A stretch of 64,000 nt of DNA, from IMG/VR virus record IMGVR_UViG_3300027899_000001, positions 248,001 through 312,000 of that record; one strand, given 5' to 3'. How positions within the stretch are numbered: the stretch's first letter is position 1; every line of letters begins with the position of its first letter. Both the position numbers and the translations under genes were made by a program. Under the pieces are notes generated by a model. It saw only the letters and a list, made by a program, of their open reading frames with translations, was not told where the DNA came from and did no database searches. Below, one piece after another: positions 17,844 through 24,517 of this stretch.

Positions 17844-18251
17844 TTAACCTCCTAAATTCATACCTCCTAAATCTGGGCCTTTTTCTGCTGCAGGTTCTGC
17901 TGGTACTGCAGCAGGTTCAGGCGATTTTTTCGCAGATTTAGGTTTTTCTGGTTCTTCTTTATCAATAAAATATTTTTTATATAAATTTATAGCAGCAGGC
18001 TCTTCAAAAATACCCTTTTTCATTCCTTCACTATAATATTTTTCATTCTCAGACAAATGTTGAAGAACAATTGTTTCAACTACTGATAAATCAGAAGAGT
18101 GTTCTTTTTCAACTTCCATTCCTACAAGAAATTCTCTTGAATCAACATCTTCAACAGTTAAACCGACTTTCTTTTGTCCTTTAAATATATCTTTATCGTT
18201 TGCTACTGATGATATAAATTCATTAAGACTTTCGTATACTAATTTTTTCAT
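17844..18251 (-). CDS. DUF5661-like protein with a capsid-targeting-like leader
   Basis: 'GMEVEKEH...I...HL.E...YY'; N-terminus MKKLVYESLNEF. Confidence 0.55.
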   Translation of the reverse strand: MKKLVYESLNEFISSVANDKDIFKGQKKVGLTVEDVDSREFLVGMEVEKEHSSDLSVVETIVLQHLSENEKYYSEGMKKGIFEEPAAINLYKKYFIDKEEPEKPKSAKKSPEPAAVPAEPAAEKGPDLGGMNLGG

Positions 18252-18263
18252 ATTATAGTTTAT

Positions 18264-18274
18264 TTTATATATTC
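18264..18274 (-). promoter_or_regulatory. Putative late promoter motif GAATATATAAA
   Basis: Exact 11-mer 13 nt upstream of the ATG at 18251. Confidence 0.5.
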
Positions 18275-18278
18275 ATAA

Positions 18279-18527
18279 TTAGGTTATAGATATAACTACT
18301 CCCCTGTCAGTAAATCTTCTTAATGCTTCAGTAACGTTTTCAATAGTAGCAGCGGGGTCATTCACTGTAATTGTTGCTTCGCTTTCTCTTGGATCTGGTC
18401 TATTACGTGGATCTGATCTATCAAATGGTTTATCAACTTGTGTAACATTTTGAAATTGTCTTTCTAGGGTGTGCGTAATTACATGAATCATTCCACGAGG
18501 GCCTTTAACTTCTACTTTAATTTCCAT
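18279..18527 (-). CDS. Hypothetical protein
   Basis: 82 aa ORF. Confidence 0.55.
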   Translation of the reverse strand: MEIKVEVKGPRGMIHVITHTLERQFQNVTQVDKPFDRSDPRNRPDPRESEATITVNDPAATIENVTEALRRFTDRGVVISIT

Positions 18528-18565
18528 AATTTTAATTTATTTTAGTTTATTTTAATATATATTCA

Positions 18566-18883
18566 TTAAATTTCATCTTCTGGTAAAATCTCTAAATCTT
18601 CTCCTTCAAGAAATGAATAAACATATTCATCTATAAATTGTTTTTGATATTCCGCAGGAGTATTATCAAGAATTGTATTTACAAGGTTATTTACGCCTTC
18701 TCTATTATAAAGTTCTTGTATTAAATAAGCAAATCCTTCATAATAAGTATCAACTTCTATATTATATCTTTTTAATTTTTCTGTAAGATATCTATTTCTA
18801 TTAAAACCTATTTTCATATCTTTAATAGGATCTGAATGTTCTTCAAATTTTTCATATAAAGATTCTTTAATAAGTTTTTTCAT
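18566..18883 (-). CDS. 'ESDPI-leader' family protein
   Basis: N-terminus MKKLIKESLYEKFEEHSDPIKDMKIG. Confidence 0.65.
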   Translation of the reverse strand: MKKLIKESLYEKFEEHSDPIKDMKIGFNRNRYLTEKLKRYNIEVDTYYEGFAYLIQELYNREGVNNLVNTILDNTPAEYQKQFIDEYVYSFLEGEDLEILPEDEI

Positions 18884-18891
18884 ATTAATAT

Positions 18892-19755
18892 TTATTTTTG
18901 ATCATCACCTTCCATAGCTCTAATTTCACGTCTATATTTCTTTTCATGTTCATATTCATACTCATGATAATCTGTAAAATACGGAGGTTTAGAAAGCTGT
19001 CTTCTATAATTTGCGCGGGGTACTATGTCTTTAAATGTAGGCGTTATAGTAAATCTTACTATTCGTGGTAATGTTACATCATCTTTTTTAAAATAATGTC
19101 TAATTAATCGCGGTTTAATTAAAATGGAAGAAAATCCCAAGTTATTAATAATATCTTTAACATATTTACCTAACTTATCAATTTCATTTTTCGGTAAGTT
19201 TTTAATTTTAGGATTATTAAACCAGAAATCTATATATCCATTACGTACATATACTGTAAAAATATAATGATTCTTATCAGCGTTTCCAAATAATTTAACT
19301 AAATCTTTGTATCTTGATTTTAATCCTATGCCCATATCATATATCGCATCATCACTTTCAATAAATTTTTCATCTATATGTTTTTGGGGTTTTATACGTT
19401 TTCCTGTATCTGGGTGTCTTTTAGGATATCCTAATTTTAATAATTTATTTCTTACACCCATATAAATATATGCAAAAGGATTACCAGTATGTCTGTTTTC
19501 CATTTTAGTATAATTCTTAGCGTATTCATCTAATATATTATAATATTTCCAATTAAATGCAGTATTTTCATCTTCAGGAAAAATGATATCATCAGGGATT
19601 TTATCTGTACCTAAAATAACAGTTAAATATTTAAAAAACCAATCTGCAGCGTCATCTTCATCTTTAAATCTACGTTTCGCATAAATTCCTATTCCTAAGT
19701 CATGAATGGGATCCGACTCTTCTATAAATTTTTCGTTAATATATTGTGCTCGCAT
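18892..19755 (-). CDS. 'ESDPI-leader' family protein, two tandem units
   Basis: N-terminal INEKFIEESDPIHDLGIG and internal IDEKFIESDDAIYDMGIG. Confidence 0.7.
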   Translation of the reverse strand: MRAQYINEKFIEESDPIHDLGIGIYAKRRFKDEDDAADWFFKYLTVILGTDKIPDDIIFPEDENTAFNWKYYNILDEYAKNYTKMENRHTGNPFAYIYMGVRNKLLKLGYPKRHPDTGKRIKPQKHIDEKFIESDDAIYDMGIGLKSRYKDLVKLFGNADKNHYIFTVYVRNGYIDFWFNNPKIKNLPKNEIDKLGKYVKDIINNLGFSSILIKPRLIRHYFKKDDVTLPRIVRFTITPTFKDIVPRANYRRQLSKPPYFTDYHEYEYEHEKKYRREIRAMEGDDQK

Positions 19756-19778
19756 TAAAGAGACTTTTATTTATATAT

Positions 19779-19928
19779 TTAATCTTCATAATATATAAAT
19801 TCACGTCCTTCATAGTTTTTTAATTTTACACAATTTCCTTCACGTCCAACGTAATAATCTGGTAACATAGGTATTTTACCACCCGGAGTATCAATAATAA
19901 ACTGAGGAACAAACCTAAATTTTTTCAT
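19779..19928 (-). pseudogene. Stranded 3' end of kamA, present as its own 49-aa ORF
   Basis: Hand-translated MKKFRFVPQFIIDTPGGKIPMLPDYYVGREGNCVKLKNYEGREFIYYED*; matches the canonical KamA C-terminal pattern (VP.F.ID.PGG.KIP..P.Y...L.NYEG). Confidence 0.8.
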
Positions 19929-19939
19929 GAATATATAAA
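19929..19939 (+). promoter_or_regulatory. Putative late promoter motif GAATATATAAA
   Basis: Exact 11-mer 8 nt upstream of the endonuclease ATG at 19947. Confidence 0.5.
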
Positions 19940-19946
19940 ATAAAAA

Positions 19947-20966
19947 ATGAAAGAATTCAAAAAAGAAAAGAATTTATTTATATGTGAAGAATGCCAACGC
20001 ACATTTGTTAAAATCGATGGGTTAAGTAAACATATAAGACTTAATCACTATTCTCAAAAAACATATTATGATAAATGGCTAAAAGAAAATGATGAAAATA
20101 CTTGTAAAATTTGTAAAAAAGAAACAACATTTATAGGATTAGGAAAAGGTTATAAAAATTGTTGTTCATCTGACTGCACTAAAAAATTTAGAACACATAA
20201 AATTCAAGCAACTTTATTACTTAGATATGGTGTAAATTCTCCTACTAAAGATAAAACTATTAGAGAAAAAGTAAATAAAACGATGATAAAAAAATATGGG
20301 CATAAATGCCCTATGAAAAATGAAAAAATACAAAAAGAAATAAAACAAAATAATTTAAAAAAATTGGAAGTAGAATATCCATTTCAGTCTTTAAAAATTC
20401 AAGAAAAAATAATTATATCTAATTTAGAAAATTTCGGAGTAAAAAATACGTTTCAACGAATAGATGTAAAAAATAAAATAAAAGAAACTTGTATGCAAAG
20501 ATATGGAGTTGAAAATCCAAATAATAATAAAAAAGTTAGAGATAAAATAGAAAAAACTTGTATAGATAAATATGGAGTTAAAAATCCATCACAGAATAAA
20601 GAAGTGCATGATAAACAACAAAAAAACGCGTGTTATTCAAAAAAATATAAAAATACTATTATAAACTATAGAGCATCTTATGAATATGATTTTTTAGAAA
20701 AATTTTACCCAGTATATTCTGATATAGTTAATGGCCCAACAATAAAATATCAATATAAAAATGAATCCAGATTATATTTTCCAGATTTTTACATTCCATC
20801 TTTAAATCTTATCGTTGAAATAAAAAATTCTTATCTTTTAAAAAAAGATAAAGAAAAAATAGAAGCAAAGAAAAAATATACTATTCTTAATGGGTATAAT
20901 TATTTAATAATTACTAATAAAGATTATTCTACATTTTCTTCATATCTTAAAATTTCTCCAGTATAA
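19947..20966 (+). mobile_element. Homing-endonuclease-like protein (C2H2 finger, YGV.NP repeats, C-terminal PD-(D/E)xK nuclease)
   Basis: 'FICEECQR...HIRLNH'; repeated 'YGVxNP'; 'YFPDFYIPSLNLIVEIK'. Confidence 0.7.
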
Positions 20967-22099
20967 CTTTTAAATTCATATACATGATCTTTATGCGATA
21001 TAATGTTATCACAGACTTCAATTTTTCCTAAATGAGAATCTACAATAAATGTTGGACACGCGTAACCACTCGTCCAGCCTCTCAATGCTGAGATAATCTG
21101 AAGTCCTTTATTAATAGTAGTTCTAAAATGACTTGTACCTGCAACAAGATCGCATGCATATATATAATATGGTCTAACTCTAATTGTAAGAAGACTATTC
21201 ATAAGCTTTTTCATAATTTGTGGGTCATCGTTAACGCCTTTGAGTAATACTGTTTGAGAACCTAAAGGAATTCCTGCATTCGCAAGCTTTTCACACGCTT
21301 GTTTAACTTCTGAAGTTATTTCATCGGGATGAGAGAAATGAATACTTATGAATAAAGGATGATATTTCTTTAAGATATTAGTTAACTCTGGCGTAATTCT
21401 TTGAGGTAACACAACAGGAACTTTAGTTCCAATTCTTAAGAACTCAACGTGTTTTATTTCTTTAATTTCTTTAAGAAGATATTCTATACTATCGTCATTC
21501 ATAGTTAAAGGATCTCCTCCAGATAATAACACATCTCGTATCTCAGTATGTTCTCTAATATACTGAAGCGCCTTTTCCCACGCTTTCTTAGGAATTCGTT
21601 CTCTATTTATGAGTCTACTTCTTGTACAGTATCGACAATTTGAAGAACAAAAGTCCGTGGTTAGAAATAATACACGATCTGGATATCTATGAACTATACA
21701 TTCCACAGGACTTTGATGTTCTTCGTTCAGCGAGTCGTTTTTCTCATTTTCAGTTACGTGAAGTTCGTTATTGGTTGGAATAACGCACTTTCCGATTCCT
21801 TCTGAAAGAGAAGTGATTGTACTTGCATAATATGGAGTAATTCTTAATGGTAAATTTATATTCTTGGATAATTCATAATTTGAATCTCCAAATATACGAC
21901 TCAATTCTTCATATGTAGTTATACTGTTACGTATCTGCCAATGCCAATCATTCCAATTAGTATCAGATACATCTGAATAAAATCTATTTTTAAAAGATTG
22001 AGTTTTTTCGGAGATGATAAGAGGGGGTTCTTCAGTATCAACGATAATCTCCTGAGCTGGTTGATACTGGTTTTTAGACGAATCTATTTGTTGTTCCAT
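20924..22099 (-). CDS. kamA: KamA-family radical SAM lysine 2,3-aminomutase
   Basis: 'WNDWHWQIRN', 'VHRYPDRVLF...CSSNCRYCTR', 'LLSGGDPL', PLP-Lys 'LLKGVND', 'VRPYY'. Confidence 0.85.
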   Translation of the reverse strand: MEQQIDSSKNQYQPAQEIIVDTEEPPLIISEKTQSFKNRFYSDVSDTNWNDWHWQIRNSITTYEELSRIFGDSNYELSKNINLPLRITPYYASTITSLSEGIGKCVIPTNNELHVTENEKNDSLNEEHQSPVECIVHRYPDRVLFLTTDFCSSNCRYCTRSRLINRERIPKKAWEKALQYIREHTEIRDVLLSGGDPLTMNDDSIEYLLKEIKEIKHVEFLRIGTKVPVVLPQRITPELTNILKKYHPLFISIHFSHPDEITSEVKQACEKLANAGIPLGSQTVLLKGVNDDPQIMKKLMNSLLTIRVRPYYIYACDLVAGTSHFRTTINKGLQIISALRGWTSGYACPTFIVDSHLGKIEVCDNIISHKDHVYEFKSYTGEILRYEENVE

Positions 22100-22179
22100 T
22101 TTGTAGTAAAAAATTTTACTTTTATATTCGTATTTTTAGTTTAGTTTTGTTCTATATATCAAAATTTTTGGGATAAAAA

Positions 22180-22255
22180 GATGGCGTGAACCTGGATCCC
22201 ACCCTGTACCTACGAAGATGATTTTCGTTGTTCTGACATTAAACTACACGCCATC
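22180..22255 (-). ncRNA. tRNA-like element (degenerate T-arm, UCA at the anticodon position)
   Basis: 9-bp closing stem GATGGCGTG/CACGCCATC; D-arm TA-GTTT-AATGTCA-GAAC-A; perfect ACGAA/TTCGT stem with 7-nt loop AATCATC; no GTTCRA T-loop. Confidence 0.45.
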
Positions 22256-22291
22256 CGGATTATGGTTAAATTTAGGGCCCAGCTAACCATC

Positions 22292-22636
22292 TTATTCTGG
22301 TAAGGTCATTTTAAAAAACTCGAAAATGGGATTAACATTTTGTTTAGAATGCATCGAAATGTCATCTAAGGTCCGTAGAGATATCGCGTTCTCTAAAGTA
22401 ATAGAACCATATTCTATCCAAAGACCTATAGAATCTACTTCATCTGGTGCACTGGTTAAAAGATCATCGAAAATACTCGTGACAATTTGTTCAGTCAATG
22501 CTTCGTTTAGTATATAGTTTTCAGGAATTTCAAATTTAGCAGATATTTTTTTAAGGTATTCTGCTTTGCCTTCTTCTATATCAGTATCTCTTTTCATCAA
22601 AGAGATTGATATACTTTTAATTAAGTTTAAATCCAT
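22292..22636 (-). CDS. Hypothetical protein
   Basis: 114 aa ORF. Confidence 0.55.
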   Translation of the reverse strand: MDLNLIKSISISLMKRDTDIEEGKAEYLKKISAKFEIPENYILNEALTEQIVTSIFDDLLTSAPDEVDSIGLWIEYGSITLENAISLRTLDDISMHSKQNVNPIFEFFKMTLPE

Positions 22637-22659
22637 AAACTAATTTTTTTATTATATAT

Positions 22660-22992
22660 TTATGTTTGTCTAATTCTAAATCCTCTTCGTTGTAACATTT
22701 TTTGTAACATCTCAGAATCAAACCAGGGGTTTTCTCCTTTTATTTTACAATATTCATTAATAAACATTTGTATATCATGATGATATTTTTCATTTATATA
22801 ATAAGTATTAGATTTAATTATATCGTTAGGTATTGTAGGAGTTTTTAAAATTTGAGGTAATATTTTTATTATATATTGAAACATTCGTACATCATCAGGA
22901 AAATTTTTCTTGGTGTGAGTTATTCCAATACCCATATCATAAATGGGATCAGATTCTTCTACAAATTTTTCAAATACATATTGCGCTTTCAA
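22660..22992 (-). CDS. 'ESDPI-leader' family protein
   Basis: MKAQYVFEKFVEESDPIYDMGIG (TTG start); its payload resembles unit 1 of 18892-19755. Confidence 0.7.
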   Translation of the reverse strand: MKAQYVFEKFVEESDPIYDMGIGITHTKKNFPDDVRMFQYIIKILPQILKTPTIPNDIIKSNTYYINEKYHHDIQMFINEYCKIKGENPWFDSEMLQKMLQRRGFRIRQT

Positions 22993-23007
22993 ATTTAATT
23001 TATTTTA

Positions 23008-23018
23008 TTTATATATTC
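23008..23018 (-). promoter_or_regulatory. Putative late promoter motif GAATATATAAA
   Basis: Exact 11-mer 16 nt upstream of the start at 22992. Confidence 0.5.
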
Positions 23019-23126
23019 AAAACTCTACATTAATATATAATAAAAGAGGTGAGGCTCTGACAAGCCAATTGGTAGTTTGGATAACCAACTGTCCCCCTTT
23101 AATTATATATTAGTCTAAAATAAAGT

Positions 23127-23816
23127 TTGGAAATCATGAATCATCAAAAAGTCTATGAATCTATAATTCAGAGAGCAAAATCTGAAAATAGAATTAAACT
23201 TAATAGAAATAATGAAAATTATATTTATTATGAAAATCATCATATTTTGCCCAAATGCTTAGGTGGAAATAATGATAAAGATAATTTGGTTTTATTAACA
23301 GCAAAGGAACATTATGTCTGTCATAAATTACTTACATATATTTATAAAGAAAACGCAAAAATATACGGTGCTTTTTTCTATATGTCATTTAATAAAAAAT
23401 ATGACAAATTTTTATCAGCTCGAGATTATGCTTACGCAATAGAATTAAATACTATCGCACATATTAATAAAAAACAATCGTTAGAAACAAAAGAAAAAAG
23501 AAGAAAATCAATGTTAGGTAAAAACAAAGGAAAAAAAATGAAAAAAGAATTTGGCGAAAACATTTCTAAACGTTTAAAAGGAAACATTCCTTGGAATAAA
23601 GGAAAACCCGGGTGTTTTTCAAATGATACTATTAATAAAATGTCAATAGCTGCAATAGGAGTAAAAAATTCATTAGAATCAAATGAAAAAAATAGGCAAT
23701 CTCATATAGGAAAAACTACATGGAATAAAGGATTAACAAAAGAAATTGATGAACGGGTTTTAAAATGTTCACTTAAAATTTCTAAAACTCTTAAAAATAA
23801 AAATTTATTAAATTAA
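23127..23816 (+). mobile_element. Free-standing HNH homing endonuclease
   Basis: 'YYENHHILPKCLGGNNDKDNLVLLTAKEHYVCHKLL'; paralog of 9287-9934; 'PWNKG' repeats. Confidence 0.8.
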
Positions 23817-24517
23817 GACTGGCCCGGACCCTTTATAGCAATTCCGCTAATTGCAGGGTTGGATCTATCATTAGGTTGCGAAAATTGTTTTACCCTATTC
23901 GCATCAGTTATATCGGCAGCATTTTGCTGAAGACCTATACTCTCTTCAACTTCTCCTTTGGCTGCTACTGCTTTACCATCTGTAACTTTATTAAGTTCTT
24001 CTGGAGCCATTGTTCCAAATCCTGAACGTTCTTCCCAATAATCTTTTCCATAATCAATTGTAAGTTGTTCTCCAGCTTTTATAGTTCTTGCTGCGATAAA
24101 ATACATTTGACGATTATCTTTATTATAAGCAAATGTGATATTTGGTTGAGGTGAATGCCCATATAAACTGCCATATCCAAGCACAATACCGTATTGCATT
24201 TTATTTTTATCGATTTCAAAAATATAATCTTTTAATCTTGGAACTGCTTTTGCTTCAAGACCCACAAAAATAATAGGCGCAATTTCAACTATTTCTCCTT
24301 TAGCATATTGTGTTTTAGCTAACACAAGATATCCTCCATTCTTTTTCTTAGAATATTCTACACGATTAACATTGAACACTTCTTTACGCGCTGTCAAGAA
24401 ACCCCCTTTATCAGCAATATGTGAAGGTTTTACTACGATATCTGTTTTTTCAAACGGATTGTAAAATTCTTCATCTAGTTTAGCAAATTGATCAAATGTT
24501 TTAATTTTATATTTCAT
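23813..24517 (-). CDS. SET-domain protein methyltransferase
   Basis: 'KNGGYLVLAK...KGEIVE', 'GSLYGHSPQPN' (NHS-like), 'AARTIKAGEQLTIDYG'. Confidence 0.8.
   Translation of the reverse strand: MKYKIKTFDQFAKLDEEFYNPFEKTDIVVKPSHIADKGGFLTARKEVFNVNRVEYSKKKNGGYLVLAKTQYAKGEIVEIAPIIFVGLEAKAVPRLKDYIFEIDKNKMQYGIVLGYGSLYGHSPQPNITFAYNKDNRQMYFIAARTIKAGEQLTIDYGKDYWEERSGFGTMAPEELNKVTDGKAVAAKGEVEESIGLQQNAADITDANRVKQFSQPNDRSNPAISGIAIKGPGQS

What the first reader, a model, noticed from the sequence alone, without database searches (positions are those of the whole stretch)
19779..22099. kamA with two C-termini: an antisense endonuclease brought a substitute tail and the original survives as a 49-aa ORF
Seen: KamA ends CPTFIVDSHLGKIEVCDNIISHKDHVYEFKSYTGEILRYEENVE, partly antisense to the nuclease's 3' end. 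Beyond the nuclease lies VPQFIIDTPGGKIPMLPDYYVGREGNCVKLKNYEGREFIYYED*, which aligns with that tail and fits the canonical KamA end better. It is uninterrupted and has its own ATG. Established: mobE splits nrdA of Aeromonas phage Aeh1 into two expressed pieces. Inference: 3'-end replacement by a mobile nuclease; the intact fragment may still be translated and work in trans.
Basis: partly seen in the sequence, partly recalled or inferred. Interest (0 to 1): 0.72.

Follow-up and report, generated by a model that had tools for sequence, protein, structure and literature searches.

The report
Nuclease cassette replaced kamA's tail
In a 405-kb freshwater phage, a selfish nuclease gene landed in the lysine-aminomutase gene kamA and brought a foreign substitute end for it, leaving the original 43-codon end stranded downstream as a probably useless but still intact relic; this is a pattern long known from fungal mitochondria, here caught in a phage alongside relatives at later stages of decay.

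Summary
kamA (20924-22099, minus strand) ends in a tail that overlaps the 3' end of an antisense nuclease gene (19947-20966) by 43 nt. Beyond the nuclease, a 49-codon ORF (19779-19928) encodes a second KamA tail.

The body of kamA is 75-81% identical to nuclease-free alleles. Their tails match ORF49 at 71-86% and the current tail at only about 30%. The insert is 1,148 bp (19911-21058): foreign tail, nuclease gene and a 36-nt leader.

The nuclease is one of 12 copies of a DUF7487 family with a PD-(D/E)XK motif. Related phages show later stages: nuclease plus a 16-codon tail stump, nuclease deleted with an 18-codon stump, and foreign tail only.

The idea that the fragment is translated and acts in trans is not supported. 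KamA is complete and keeps both catalytic residues of the tail. ORF49's ATG belongs to the cassette's leader, its start context is atypical, and relatives let the fragment decay. The mobE/nrdA split-gene analogy does not fit.

The closest precedent is the mobile-ORF C-terminal duplication of fungal mitochondria. Expression could not be tested.

The parts
21059..22099 (-). kamA body, codons 1-347 (native part). It holds the radical-SAM motif C151/C155/C158, plus R160 and D317.
   Evidence: The body is 75-81% identical to nuclease-free alleles P0002-P0019. In 20-codon windows the DNA is 65-92% identical to L095, L027 and L030 over codons 41-340, excluding the variable N-terminus.
20924..21058 (-). 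Foreign 'type 2' tail of kamA, codons 348-391 plus the stop. It holds D354 and the PLP-lysine K359.
   Evidence: The tail is about 30% identical to the tails of the closest bodies and 60-67% identical to type-2 tails such as P0043, P0022, P0055 and P0020. DNA identity switches from type-1-like to type-2-like between codons 341 and 360. The model's pLDDT is 82-90 over the tail.
19947..20966 (+). Free-standing homing-endonuclease-like gene (339 aa). It has an N-terminal C2H2-like zinc finger, about 30-aa repeats and a C-terminal PD-(D/E)XK nuclease domain.
   Evidence: Pfam DUF7487 matches at E 8.8e-41. TnsA-like_N scores 23.8 bits, below its cut-off. PHROGs calls the matched families homing endonuclease and endonuclease. 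There are 12 copies in the genome. The D...ExK motif is invariant in all copies.
19911..19946 (+). 36-nt leader of the nuclease gene, which is cassette DNA. Its antisense supplies ORF49's ATG and the first six codons (MKKFRF).
   Evidence: The motif tttttCATGAATATATAAAATAAAAA-ATG is shared with the leaders of nuclease copies at genome positions 91888, 108266 and 128090.
19779..19910 (-). Displaced native tail of kamA: Val348 to the stop, 132 nt. It is the homologous part of ORF49 (19779-19928).
   Evidence: It has the same length as nuclease-free tails. It is 76.5-78% identical in DNA to the L095 and L027 tails (81% and 86% in protein), matching the divergence of the body. The type-1 tail profile scores E 3.9e-24. 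Only 1 of 42 residues is lineage-unique.
19911..21058 (.). The whole insert (1,148 bp): foreign tail, antisense nuclease gene and leader.
   Evidence: The boundaries come from a codon-level comparison with the empty sites L095 and L027 and from the leader comparison among paralogs.
20298..20311 (-). Terminator-like hairpin followed by a T run on the kamA strand, between the kamA stop and ORF49.
   Evidence: This is a consensus scan only. Four such sites were found in the region against 0.7 expected.

Best explanation
A free-standing homing-endonuclease gene of the DUF7487 family, carrying a PD-(D/E)XK motif, entered kamA together with the adjacent 3' end of its donor's kamA.

Inferred sequence of events:
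1. The nuclease, or another break, opened a 'type 1' kamA allele near codon 348. This is just upstream of the codons for the substrate-binding Asp and the PLP-binding Lys.
2. The left end was repaired by homologous recombination with a donor kamA that carries a divergent 'type 2' tail and the nuclease gene downstream in convergent orientation.
3. The right end was joined without homology.
4. As a result the donor tail, the nuclease gene and its leader (1,148 bp) now sit between codon 347 and the recipient's own codon 348.

The chimeric KamA (native body plus foreign tail) is the working enzyme. The displaced native tail (ORF49) is a recent relic that has not yet decayed. Its ATG is a by-product of the cassette's leader.

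Shown here: the chimerism, the insertion boundaries, the empty sites, and the later decay and loss stages in relatives.

Inferred: cleavage by this nuclease at this site, the repair pathway, and the lack of function of ORF49.
For: 1. Body and tail disagree. The body is 75-81% identical to P0002-P0019. Their tails are 71-86% identical to ORF49 and about 30% identical to the current tail. The current tail's best matches (60-67%) belong to proteins whose bodies are only 64-71% identical.
2. In DNA, ORF49 is 76.5-78% identical to the empty-site tails. The last 300 nt of the body are 75-78% identical to the same alleles. The current tail is 39% identical. Identity switches within codons 341-360.
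3. Empty sites exist. In L095, L027/L028 and about 50 IMG/VR loci the kamA stop is followed directly by the next gene, with no nuclease.
4. The same architecture occurs elsewhere in decayed form.
- L025/L026 carry a type-2 tail, an antisense DUF7487 gene with a 23-nt overlap, and only the last 16 codons of a type-1 tail.
- L140 equals L025 minus about 790 bp of nuclease interior, and still carries an 18-codon type-1 stump (E 1.5e-7).
- L074 has a truncated 76-aa nuclease remnant.
- L023, L096, L045 and L098 have a type-2 tail only.
5. Type-2 tails are scattered over the body tree. Starred branches force at least 5 changes. Holding type-2 bodies together costs 130 lnL units, p-AU 0.0015.
6. The nuclease has 12 copies in the genome with an invariant D...ExK motif and a variable number of repeats. 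PHROGs calls the matched families homing endonucleases.
7. The chimeric protein looks functional. All family-invariant residues are present, including D354 and K359 in the foreign tail. The tail is modelled with confidence and the model has TM 0.80 to 2A5H.
8. ORF49 looks like a relic. Its ATG lies in the cassette leader. A content upstream is 0.25 against 0.54 +/- 0.12 for genes, the 2.8th percentile. A terminator-like hairpin lies upstream.
Against: - No cleavage data exist, so the nuclease's target is inferred only from the junction.
- The two kamA-linked nucleases (own and L025) are only 42% identical. L025's is closer (52%) to another copy in this genome. A single kamA-specific nuclease lineage is therefore not shown.
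- Most type-2 alleles sampled carry no nuclease. Their spread could owe something to ordinary recombination.
- No close donor of the cassette was found.
- ORF49 shows no decay at all: 1 of 42 residues is unique and 0 of 16 invariant positions are changed. This fits recency but equally fits purifying selection.
- None of the five other antisense nuclease copies examined in this genome shows a leftover tail.
Confidence: 0.82

Rival explanations
1. ORF49 is a functional small protein. Under this reading the displaced tail is translated and either complements or modulates KamA in trans, or has another role.
For: The ORF is intact with an in-frame ATG. It has no lineage-specific damage: 1 of 42 residues is unique, against 19 of 347 in the body. 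It retains the Asp and Lys equivalents. This genome does not use Shine-Dalgarno sites (4.7% of genes), so the lack of one is no argument against translation.
Against: KamA already has a complete tail in cis. The ATG and six codons are the antisense of the nuclease leader. The upstream context is T-rich, at the 2.8th percentile of genes for A content. The gap to the divergent nuclease ATG is only 18 nt, and a terminator-like hairpin lies between kamA and ORF49. In L025 and L140 the homologous leftover is reduced to 16-18 codons without the catalytic residues. The complex prediction gave no answer.
Confidence: 0.1
2. The tail was duplicated in place and one copy diverged, with no foreign DNA involved. 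The nuclease inserted between the copies later.
For: The two tails are homologous and of nearly equal length.
Against: The current tail is 39% identical in DNA to the native type but 65-82% identical to type-2 tails of other phages. The same type-2 tail plus nuclease plus type-1 stump occurs in an unrelated body lineage.
Confidence: 0.03
3. The insert is an intron-like element, and RNA splicing joins codon 347 to ORF49 to restore the native CDS.
For: The insert is flanked exactly by codon 347 and codon 348 of the native gene, so precise removal would restore the frame.
Against: No Rfam family, including group I and II introns, matches 18000-24000 at E <= 1. The 5' exon would end in G and the insert in T, not the U and G expected of group I introns (the rule is from my own knowledge). 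The nuclease gene is antisense. The foreign tail is a bona fide KamA tail with its own stop, and it serves alone in nuclease-free genes.
Confidence: 0.02
4. The nuclease cassette brought the ORF49 fragment, and the current tail is native.
For: ORF49 abuts the nuclease's 5' end.
Against: ORF49 matches the tails of exactly those alleles whose bodies are closest to this kamA, at the same divergence as the body. The current tail does not.
Confidence: 0.03

Closest known systems
Mobile endonuclease ORFs (mORFs) with carboxy-terminal duplication in fungal mitochondria: Allomyces macrogynus atp6, and Glomus sp. atp6, atp9, cox2 and nad3 (PMC3630166)
   Same: A foreign C-terminus lies in frame with the host gene. 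An endonuclease ORF follows it, and the native C-terminus is retained downstream. The native piece clusters with relatives and the inserted piece does not. In one Glomus gene (atp6) the native piece was not transcribed.
   Different: The host here is a 405-kb phage genome, not mtDNA. The nuclease is a DUF7487 protein with a PD-(D/E)XK motif, not LAGLIDADG or GIY-YIG. The nuclease gene is antisense and overlaps the new tail 3' to 3', rather than lying in phase. The swapped segment carries two catalytic residues.
Free-standing homing endonucleases of T4-like phages (seg and mob genes), with co-conversion of flanking markers (my own knowledge; overview in PMC10448857)
   Same: The nuclease gene is free-standing and present or absent among syntenic phages. 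It sits next to a conserved gene. Flanking sequence is carried along.
   Different: In those cases repair is homologous on both sides, so no duplicated gene end is left. I found no phage case with a retained native tail in the searchable literature.
mobE splitting nrdA of Aeromonas phage Aeh1
   Same: A free-standing nuclease gene lies inside a phage metabolic gene.
   Different: In Aeh1 the gene is cut into two non-redundant pieces that are both needed. Here the upstream gene is complete and the downstream piece is redundant.
Integrative elements that carry a substitute 3' end for their target gene, such as e14 in icd of E. coli and elements in tRNA genes (my own knowledge)
   Same: The element restores the target gene with its own copy of the 3' end and displaces the original.
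   Different: Those elements use site-specific integrases and att sites and are excisable. Here no integrase is present and the nuclease is of the homing type.
phi3T-type prophages integrating in kamA of Bacillus (PMC6957869)
   Same: The target gene is the same and so is the spot. The attB core CCTAC falls in the Val-Pro-Thr codons, as seen in L082. That is within two codons of this junction.
   Different: The mechanism is a serine recombinase. The gene is truly disrupted and is rebuilt by excision. No substitute tail is supplied.

Membership tests
KamA family radical SAM aminomutase (TIGR00238) | Whole-protein score above the curated cut-off | tested here: met
   340.8 bits against a cut-off of 199.2.
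KamA family radical SAM aminomutase (TIGR00238) | CxxxCxxC cluster motif and the PLP-binding lysine | tested here: met
   C151, C155, C158 and K359 are invariant in A2. K359 aligns with K337 of 2A5H. The role of K337 is from my own knowledge of that structure.
Lysine 2,3-aminomutase proper (TIGR03820 equivalog) | Score above the equivalog cut-off | tested here: not met
   412.1 bits against a cut-off of 525.4. The protein ends at profile position 360 of 417 and so lacks the C-terminal extension.
Lysine 2,3-aminomutase proper (TIGR03820 equivalog) | Substrate-binding residues (Arg134, Asp293 and Asp330 of 2A5H) | tested here: met
   R160, D317 and D354 align to them and are invariant in A2. The residue roles are from my own knowledge.
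Free-standing homing endonuclease gene | Nuclease domain with an intact catalytic motif | tested here: met
   The PD...E-x-K motif is invariant in all 13 aligned copies. DUF7487 matches at E 8.8e-41. The TnsA-like match is below its cut-off.
Free-standing homing endonuclease gene | Present or absent at the same site among otherwise syntenic genomes | tested here: met
   Empty sites are L095, L027 and others. Filled sites are the window and L025. A deleted site is L140.
Free-standing homing endonuclease gene | Site-specific cleavage of the nuclease-free allele, with immunity of its own allele | not testable with these tools
   This needs purified protein and target DNA.
mORF-type C-terminal replacement (Allomyces atp6 type) | Inserted C-terminus in frame, endonuclease ORF next to it, and native C-terminus retained downstream | tested here: met
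   However, the ORF is antisense, not in phase.
mORF-type C-terminal replacement (Allomyces atp6 type) | The native piece groups with relatives and the inserted piece is foreign | tested here: met
mORF-type C-terminal replacement (Allomyces atp6 type) | LAGLIDADG or GIY-YIG endonuclease in a mitochondrial genome | tested here: not met
   The host is a phage genome of 405,016 bp with terminal repeats. The nuclease is a DUF7487 protein with a PD-(D/E)XK motif.
Split gene of the mobE/nrdA kind | Two ORFs encoding non-overlapping, jointly required parts of one protein | tested here: not met
   kamA covers the whole family profile to its end, and ORF49 duplicates columns already present.
Group I or II intron carrying a homing endonuclease | Ribozyme core detectable | tested here: not met
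   There are no Rfam matches at E <= 1 in 18000-24000.

The most novel reading that the evidence does not exclude
The divergent 'type 2' tail is a nuclease-immune allele of the KamA active-site segment (Asp354 to Lys359). Under this reading, DUF7487 homing endonucleases have driven it repeatedly through unrelated kamA backbones of huge freshwater phages. Homing would then be swapping catalytic modules of an enzyme, not just neutral flanks. The window would have caught the earliest stage, with an intact displaced tail that the cassette's leader happens to equip with a start codon.
Probability: 0.4. Interest if true: 0.6.

Novelty: new variant of a known kind. Interest (0 to 1): 0.5.

Why it matters
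This looks like a clear phage example of a process described mainly in fungal mitochondria. A homing nuclease invades a gene without killing it, because it carries a spare gene end.

Together with the relatives found here, the window forms a series of stages:
1. empty site;
2. fresh insertion with an intact relic;
3. truncated relic;
4. nuclease deleted, leaving a scar;
5. foreign tail only.

The series suggests how such elements leave lasting chimeric genes behind. It also offers an explanation for why the last 43 residues of phage KamA, which hold two catalytic residues, disagree with the phylogeny of the rest of the protein.

It also gives the uncharacterised DUF7487 nuclease family a candidate target that can be tested directly. 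For annotation, ORF49-like fragments should be flagged as gene remnants rather than small proteins.

Tried and rejected
- Intron or splicing: the Rfam scan found nothing.
- tRNA scan of the window: nothing.
- Expression: no RNA run was listed. Only one DNA run holds the sequence. Laying its contigs confirmed the assembly but showed no nuclease-free variant, and the short joints reported come from repeats.
- Trans-complementation in silico: KamA 1-347 with ORF49 gave 'no answer', which is evidence neither for nor against.
- Generality within the genome: four of the five other plus-strand nuclease copies also overlap a neighbour's 3' end by 21-64 nt. None of the five shows a detectable leftover tail in the 50-172 nt upstream of it. 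A flank-against-flank tblastn found only the multi-copy gene family and was too insensitive to see even the kamA pair.
- Donor search: the nearest nuclease relatives in IMG/VR are 43-56% identical and none lies next to kamA.
- More filled sites: degenerate DNA pattern scans of IMG/VR and JGI metagenomes for type-2 tails found many type-2-like alleles. They found no further nuclease-bearing ones.
- The phage GenBank collection holds only distant KamA homologues (54% identity or less) in huge phages.
- Literature: no phage precedent for a retained native tail turned up, and there is no paper on DUF7487. This is not proof that none exists.
Full report
**Where the window lies**

The window is bases 248001-312000 of a 405,016-bp IMG/VR virus record with direct terminal repeats. 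The genome is 28.8% G+C. The nearest GenBank phage matches to the kamA product are uncultured huge phages at 52-55% protein identity. Shine-Dalgarno-like motifs precede only 4.7% of its genes, and gene starts are preceded by A-rich sequence.

**The observation**

- kamA is 20924..22099 on the minus strand (391 aa).
- A 339-aa ORF lies at 19947..20966 on the plus strand. The two genes converge and overlap by 43 nt.
- ORF49 is 19779..19928 on the minus strand.
- kamA passes the KamA-family cut-off (340.8 bits against 199.2). It aligns with the solved lysine 2,3-aminomutase 2A5H over residues 39-389 (E 3e-111).
- ORF49 hits Pfam LAM_C at profile positions 13-55 (E 3e-7). kamA's own tail covers positions 1-56 of the same profile.
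- The two tails are 33% identical as protein and unrelated as DNA.
- A second assembly is identical over 9.2 kb. A 46-kb Logan contig covers the region without a difference.

**Which tail is native**

A search of 5.8 billion proteins returned many homologues of 60-77% identity and about 389 aa. Their C-termini fall into two kinds.
- Type 1 carries the motif D-T/A-P-G-G-K-I-P-L-L-P, as in bacterial KamA.
- Type 2 carries D-S-x-x-G-K-I-x-x-S-x-N-x-I.

The body of this kamA (residues 1-347) is 75-81% identical to type-1 proteins P0002-P0019. Their tails are 71-86% identical to ORF49 but only 27-39% identical to the current tail. The current tail matches type-2 tails best, at 60-67%, and the bodies of those proteins are only 64-71% identical.

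The DNA tells the same story.
- The 132-nt native part of ORF49 has exactly the length of the tails of empty alleles L095 and L027.
- It is 76.5% and 78% identical to those tails. The last 300 nt of the body are 78% and 75% identical to the same alleles.
- Along the gene, identity to type-1 alleles drops from about 70-85% to about 50% within codons 341-360. Identity to type-2 alleles rises to 65-82% over the same stretch.

The junctions are clean.
- Codon 347 (GCG) is followed by foreign codon 348 (TGT).
- The native sequence resumes at its own codon 348 (GTT) at 19910.
- The insert is therefore 19911-21058, or 1,148 bp.

**The nuclease**

- The ORF matches Pfam DUF7487 (E 8.8e-41). It weakly matches the TnsA-like endonuclease N domain and a C2H2 zinc finger.
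- It matches PHROG families labelled homing endonuclease. No solved relative was found beyond zinc fingers.
- The genome holds 12 copies.
- The copies differ in the number of roughly 30-aa repeats. All of them keep a P-D...E-x-K motif.
- A conserved leader sequence (CATGAATATATAAAATAAAAA followed by ATG) precedes this copy and three others.
- The reverse complement of that leader supplies ORF49's ATG and its first six codons. The start codon is therefore cassette DNA, not a feature of the old gene.

**Empty, filled and decayed sites elsewhere**

- Nuclease-free type-1 alleles are followed directly by the next gene. Examples are L027/L028 (a cupin gene) and L095 (a DUF5661 gene), along with about 50 IMG/VR loci.
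- L025/L026 (protein P0021) repeat the architecture. They carry a type-2 tail and an antisense DUF7487 gene overlapping it by 23 nt. Next comes a 34-nt leader, then only the last 16 codons and the stop of a type-1 tail.
- L140 (P0025, the sister of P0021 in the body tree) has the type-2 tail, an 80-nt scar and an 18-codon type-1 stump (E 1.5e-7).
- Aligned to L025, L140 lacks about 790 bp, which is nearly the whole nuclease ORF.
- L074 has a 76-aa nuclease remnant after an odd short tail.
- Other type-2 alleles (L023/L024, L096/L097, L045, L098, L141) have neither a nuclease nor a stump.

These loci read as successive stages of one process: invasion, decay of the displaced tail, loss of the nuclease, and a chimeric gene left behind.

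**Are type-2 tails mobile?**

- On a tree of the bodies alone, type-2 tails need 10 changes by parsimony. At least 5 of these are forced by well-supported branches, and the query nests among type-1 alleles.
- Forcing all type-2 bodies into one clade costs 130 log-likelihood units (p-AU 0.0015).
- More distant phage KamA proteins carry type-2-like tails natively. They are a plausible source.

There are caveats.
- The type-2 class is heterogeneous and the tree has some long branches.
- Only two body lineages are caught with the nuclease.
- The two kamA-linked nucleases are only 42% identical.

**Is the chimera functional?**

- All residues invariant in 40 homologues are present.
- They include the cluster cysteines, R160 and D317. 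In the foreign tail they include D354 and K359.
- By the alignment to 2A5H, these residues correspond to R134, D293, D330 and the PLP-lysine K337. The residue roles are from my own knowledge of that structure.
- An AlphaFold model gives pLDDT 82-90 over the tail. It superposes on 2A5H with TM 0.80.
- Type-2 tails serve alone in many intact genes.

**Is ORF49 used?**

This could not be tested directly. No RNA run was listed.

Against use:
- KamA needs no trans tail.
- The ATG is accidental cassette sequence.
- A content in the 20 nt upstream is 0.25. Genes average 0.54 +/- 0.12, which puts ORF49 at the 2.8th percentile.
- Only 18 nt separate it from the divergent nuclease ATG.
- A terminator-like hairpin at 20311..20298 lies between kamA and ORF49. 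This is a weak consensus match.
- The homologous leftovers in L025 and L140 have lost the catalytic residues.

For use, or at least not against it:
- ORF49 is undamaged. One of 42 residues is lineage-unique, against 19 of 347 in the body, and none of 16 invariant positions is changed.
- This means either a recent insertion or selection. The data cannot separate the two.

The complex prediction returned no answer.

**Comparison with known systems**

- The closest precedent is the mobile-ORF C-terminal duplication of fungal mitochondria. Examples are Allomyces atp6 and Glomus atp6, atp9, cox2 and nad3. There the inserted tail is foreign, and the native one persists downstream and, in one of the Glomus genes (atp6), was not transcribed (PMC3630166).
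- Free-standing phage nucleases are known to sit next to or within essential genes (PMC10448857). I found no phage report of a retained native tail.
- The mobE/nrdA case differs, because there both pieces are needed.

**Verdict**

The 3'-end replacement is well supported. The trans-acting fragment is unsupported. This is a new variant of a known kind, and its main value is the comparative series and a testable target for DUF7487.

Noticed in passing
window 22174-22291 (minus strand), between the 114-aa gene and kamA; also L027:3809-3922, L095:238-350, L023:3787-3904, L025:3810-3926, L033:3793-3908: A G+C-rich, roughly 115-nt conserved element with apparent structure. It has a hairpin (TGGTTA...TAACCA), then a cloverleaf-like four-way junction closed by a 9-11 bp stem and a U run. 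RNAalifold predicts 29 pairs, 11 of them with compensatory changes across 6 sequences. A single-sequence fold is no better than shuffles (z = 0.08). ARAGORN and Rfam do not recognise it. It is followed by a conserved AT-rich leader with a small hairpin just before the kamA ATG.
   Followed up: partly
L091:1250-2410 (IMGVR_UViG_3300037225_001164): A kamA homologue carries an in-frame LAGLIDADG-type intein of about 385 aa. It is inserted exactly at the third cysteine of the radical-SAM CxxxCxxC motif (CRY|S...HN|CTR). This is a second, unrelated selfish nuclease aimed at a catalytic motif of phage kamA.
   Followed up: partly
L082:1-2658 (IMGVR_UViG_2901201504_000001): A bacterial-type kamA is cut after GTT CCTAC (Val-Pro-Thr) and followed by a 529-aa large serine recombinase. 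This matches the phi3T-type prophage attB core CCTAC in kamA (PMC6957869). The break lies within two codons of the nuclease-cassette junction in the window.
   Followed up: partly
L074:2058-2413: A kamA has an unusually short tail (29 residues after the conserved Pro). It is followed by a truncated 76-aa antisense DUF7487 remnant consisting of the zinc finger only.
   Followed up: no
window 23127-23816 (+): An HNH homing-endonuclease-like gene (phrog_655, E 1e-39) lies antisense among minus-strand genes. Its 3' end overlaps the neighbouring 234-aa gene (23813-24517) by 4 nt. That gene sits where related loci carry a SET-domain gene, but it was not itself scanned. Related loci have no gene at this position.
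   Followed up: no
genome positions 82071-82979, 126455-127255, 178597-179538 and 378073-378876 (outside the window): Four other plus-strand DUF7487 copies also overlap the 3' end of a convergent neighbour, by 21-64 nt. Each has 130-170 nt of apparently non-coding DNA upstream. No leftover gene tail was detectable there.
   Followed up: yes
window 18892-19755, 18566-18883 and 22660-22992 (minus strand), and many sites genome-wide: A multi-copy gene family shares the N-terminus M-K/R-A-Q-Y..EKF.EESDPI.DMGIG and has no Pfam or PHROG match. Members often lie next to nuclease copies. Three of them sit between ORF49 and the DUF5661-like gene, where the empty allele L095 has none.
   Followed up: no
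L143:1161-5809 (IMGVR_UViG_3300032053_000497): Three DUF7487 nuclease genes lie in tandem on one strand.
   Followed up: no
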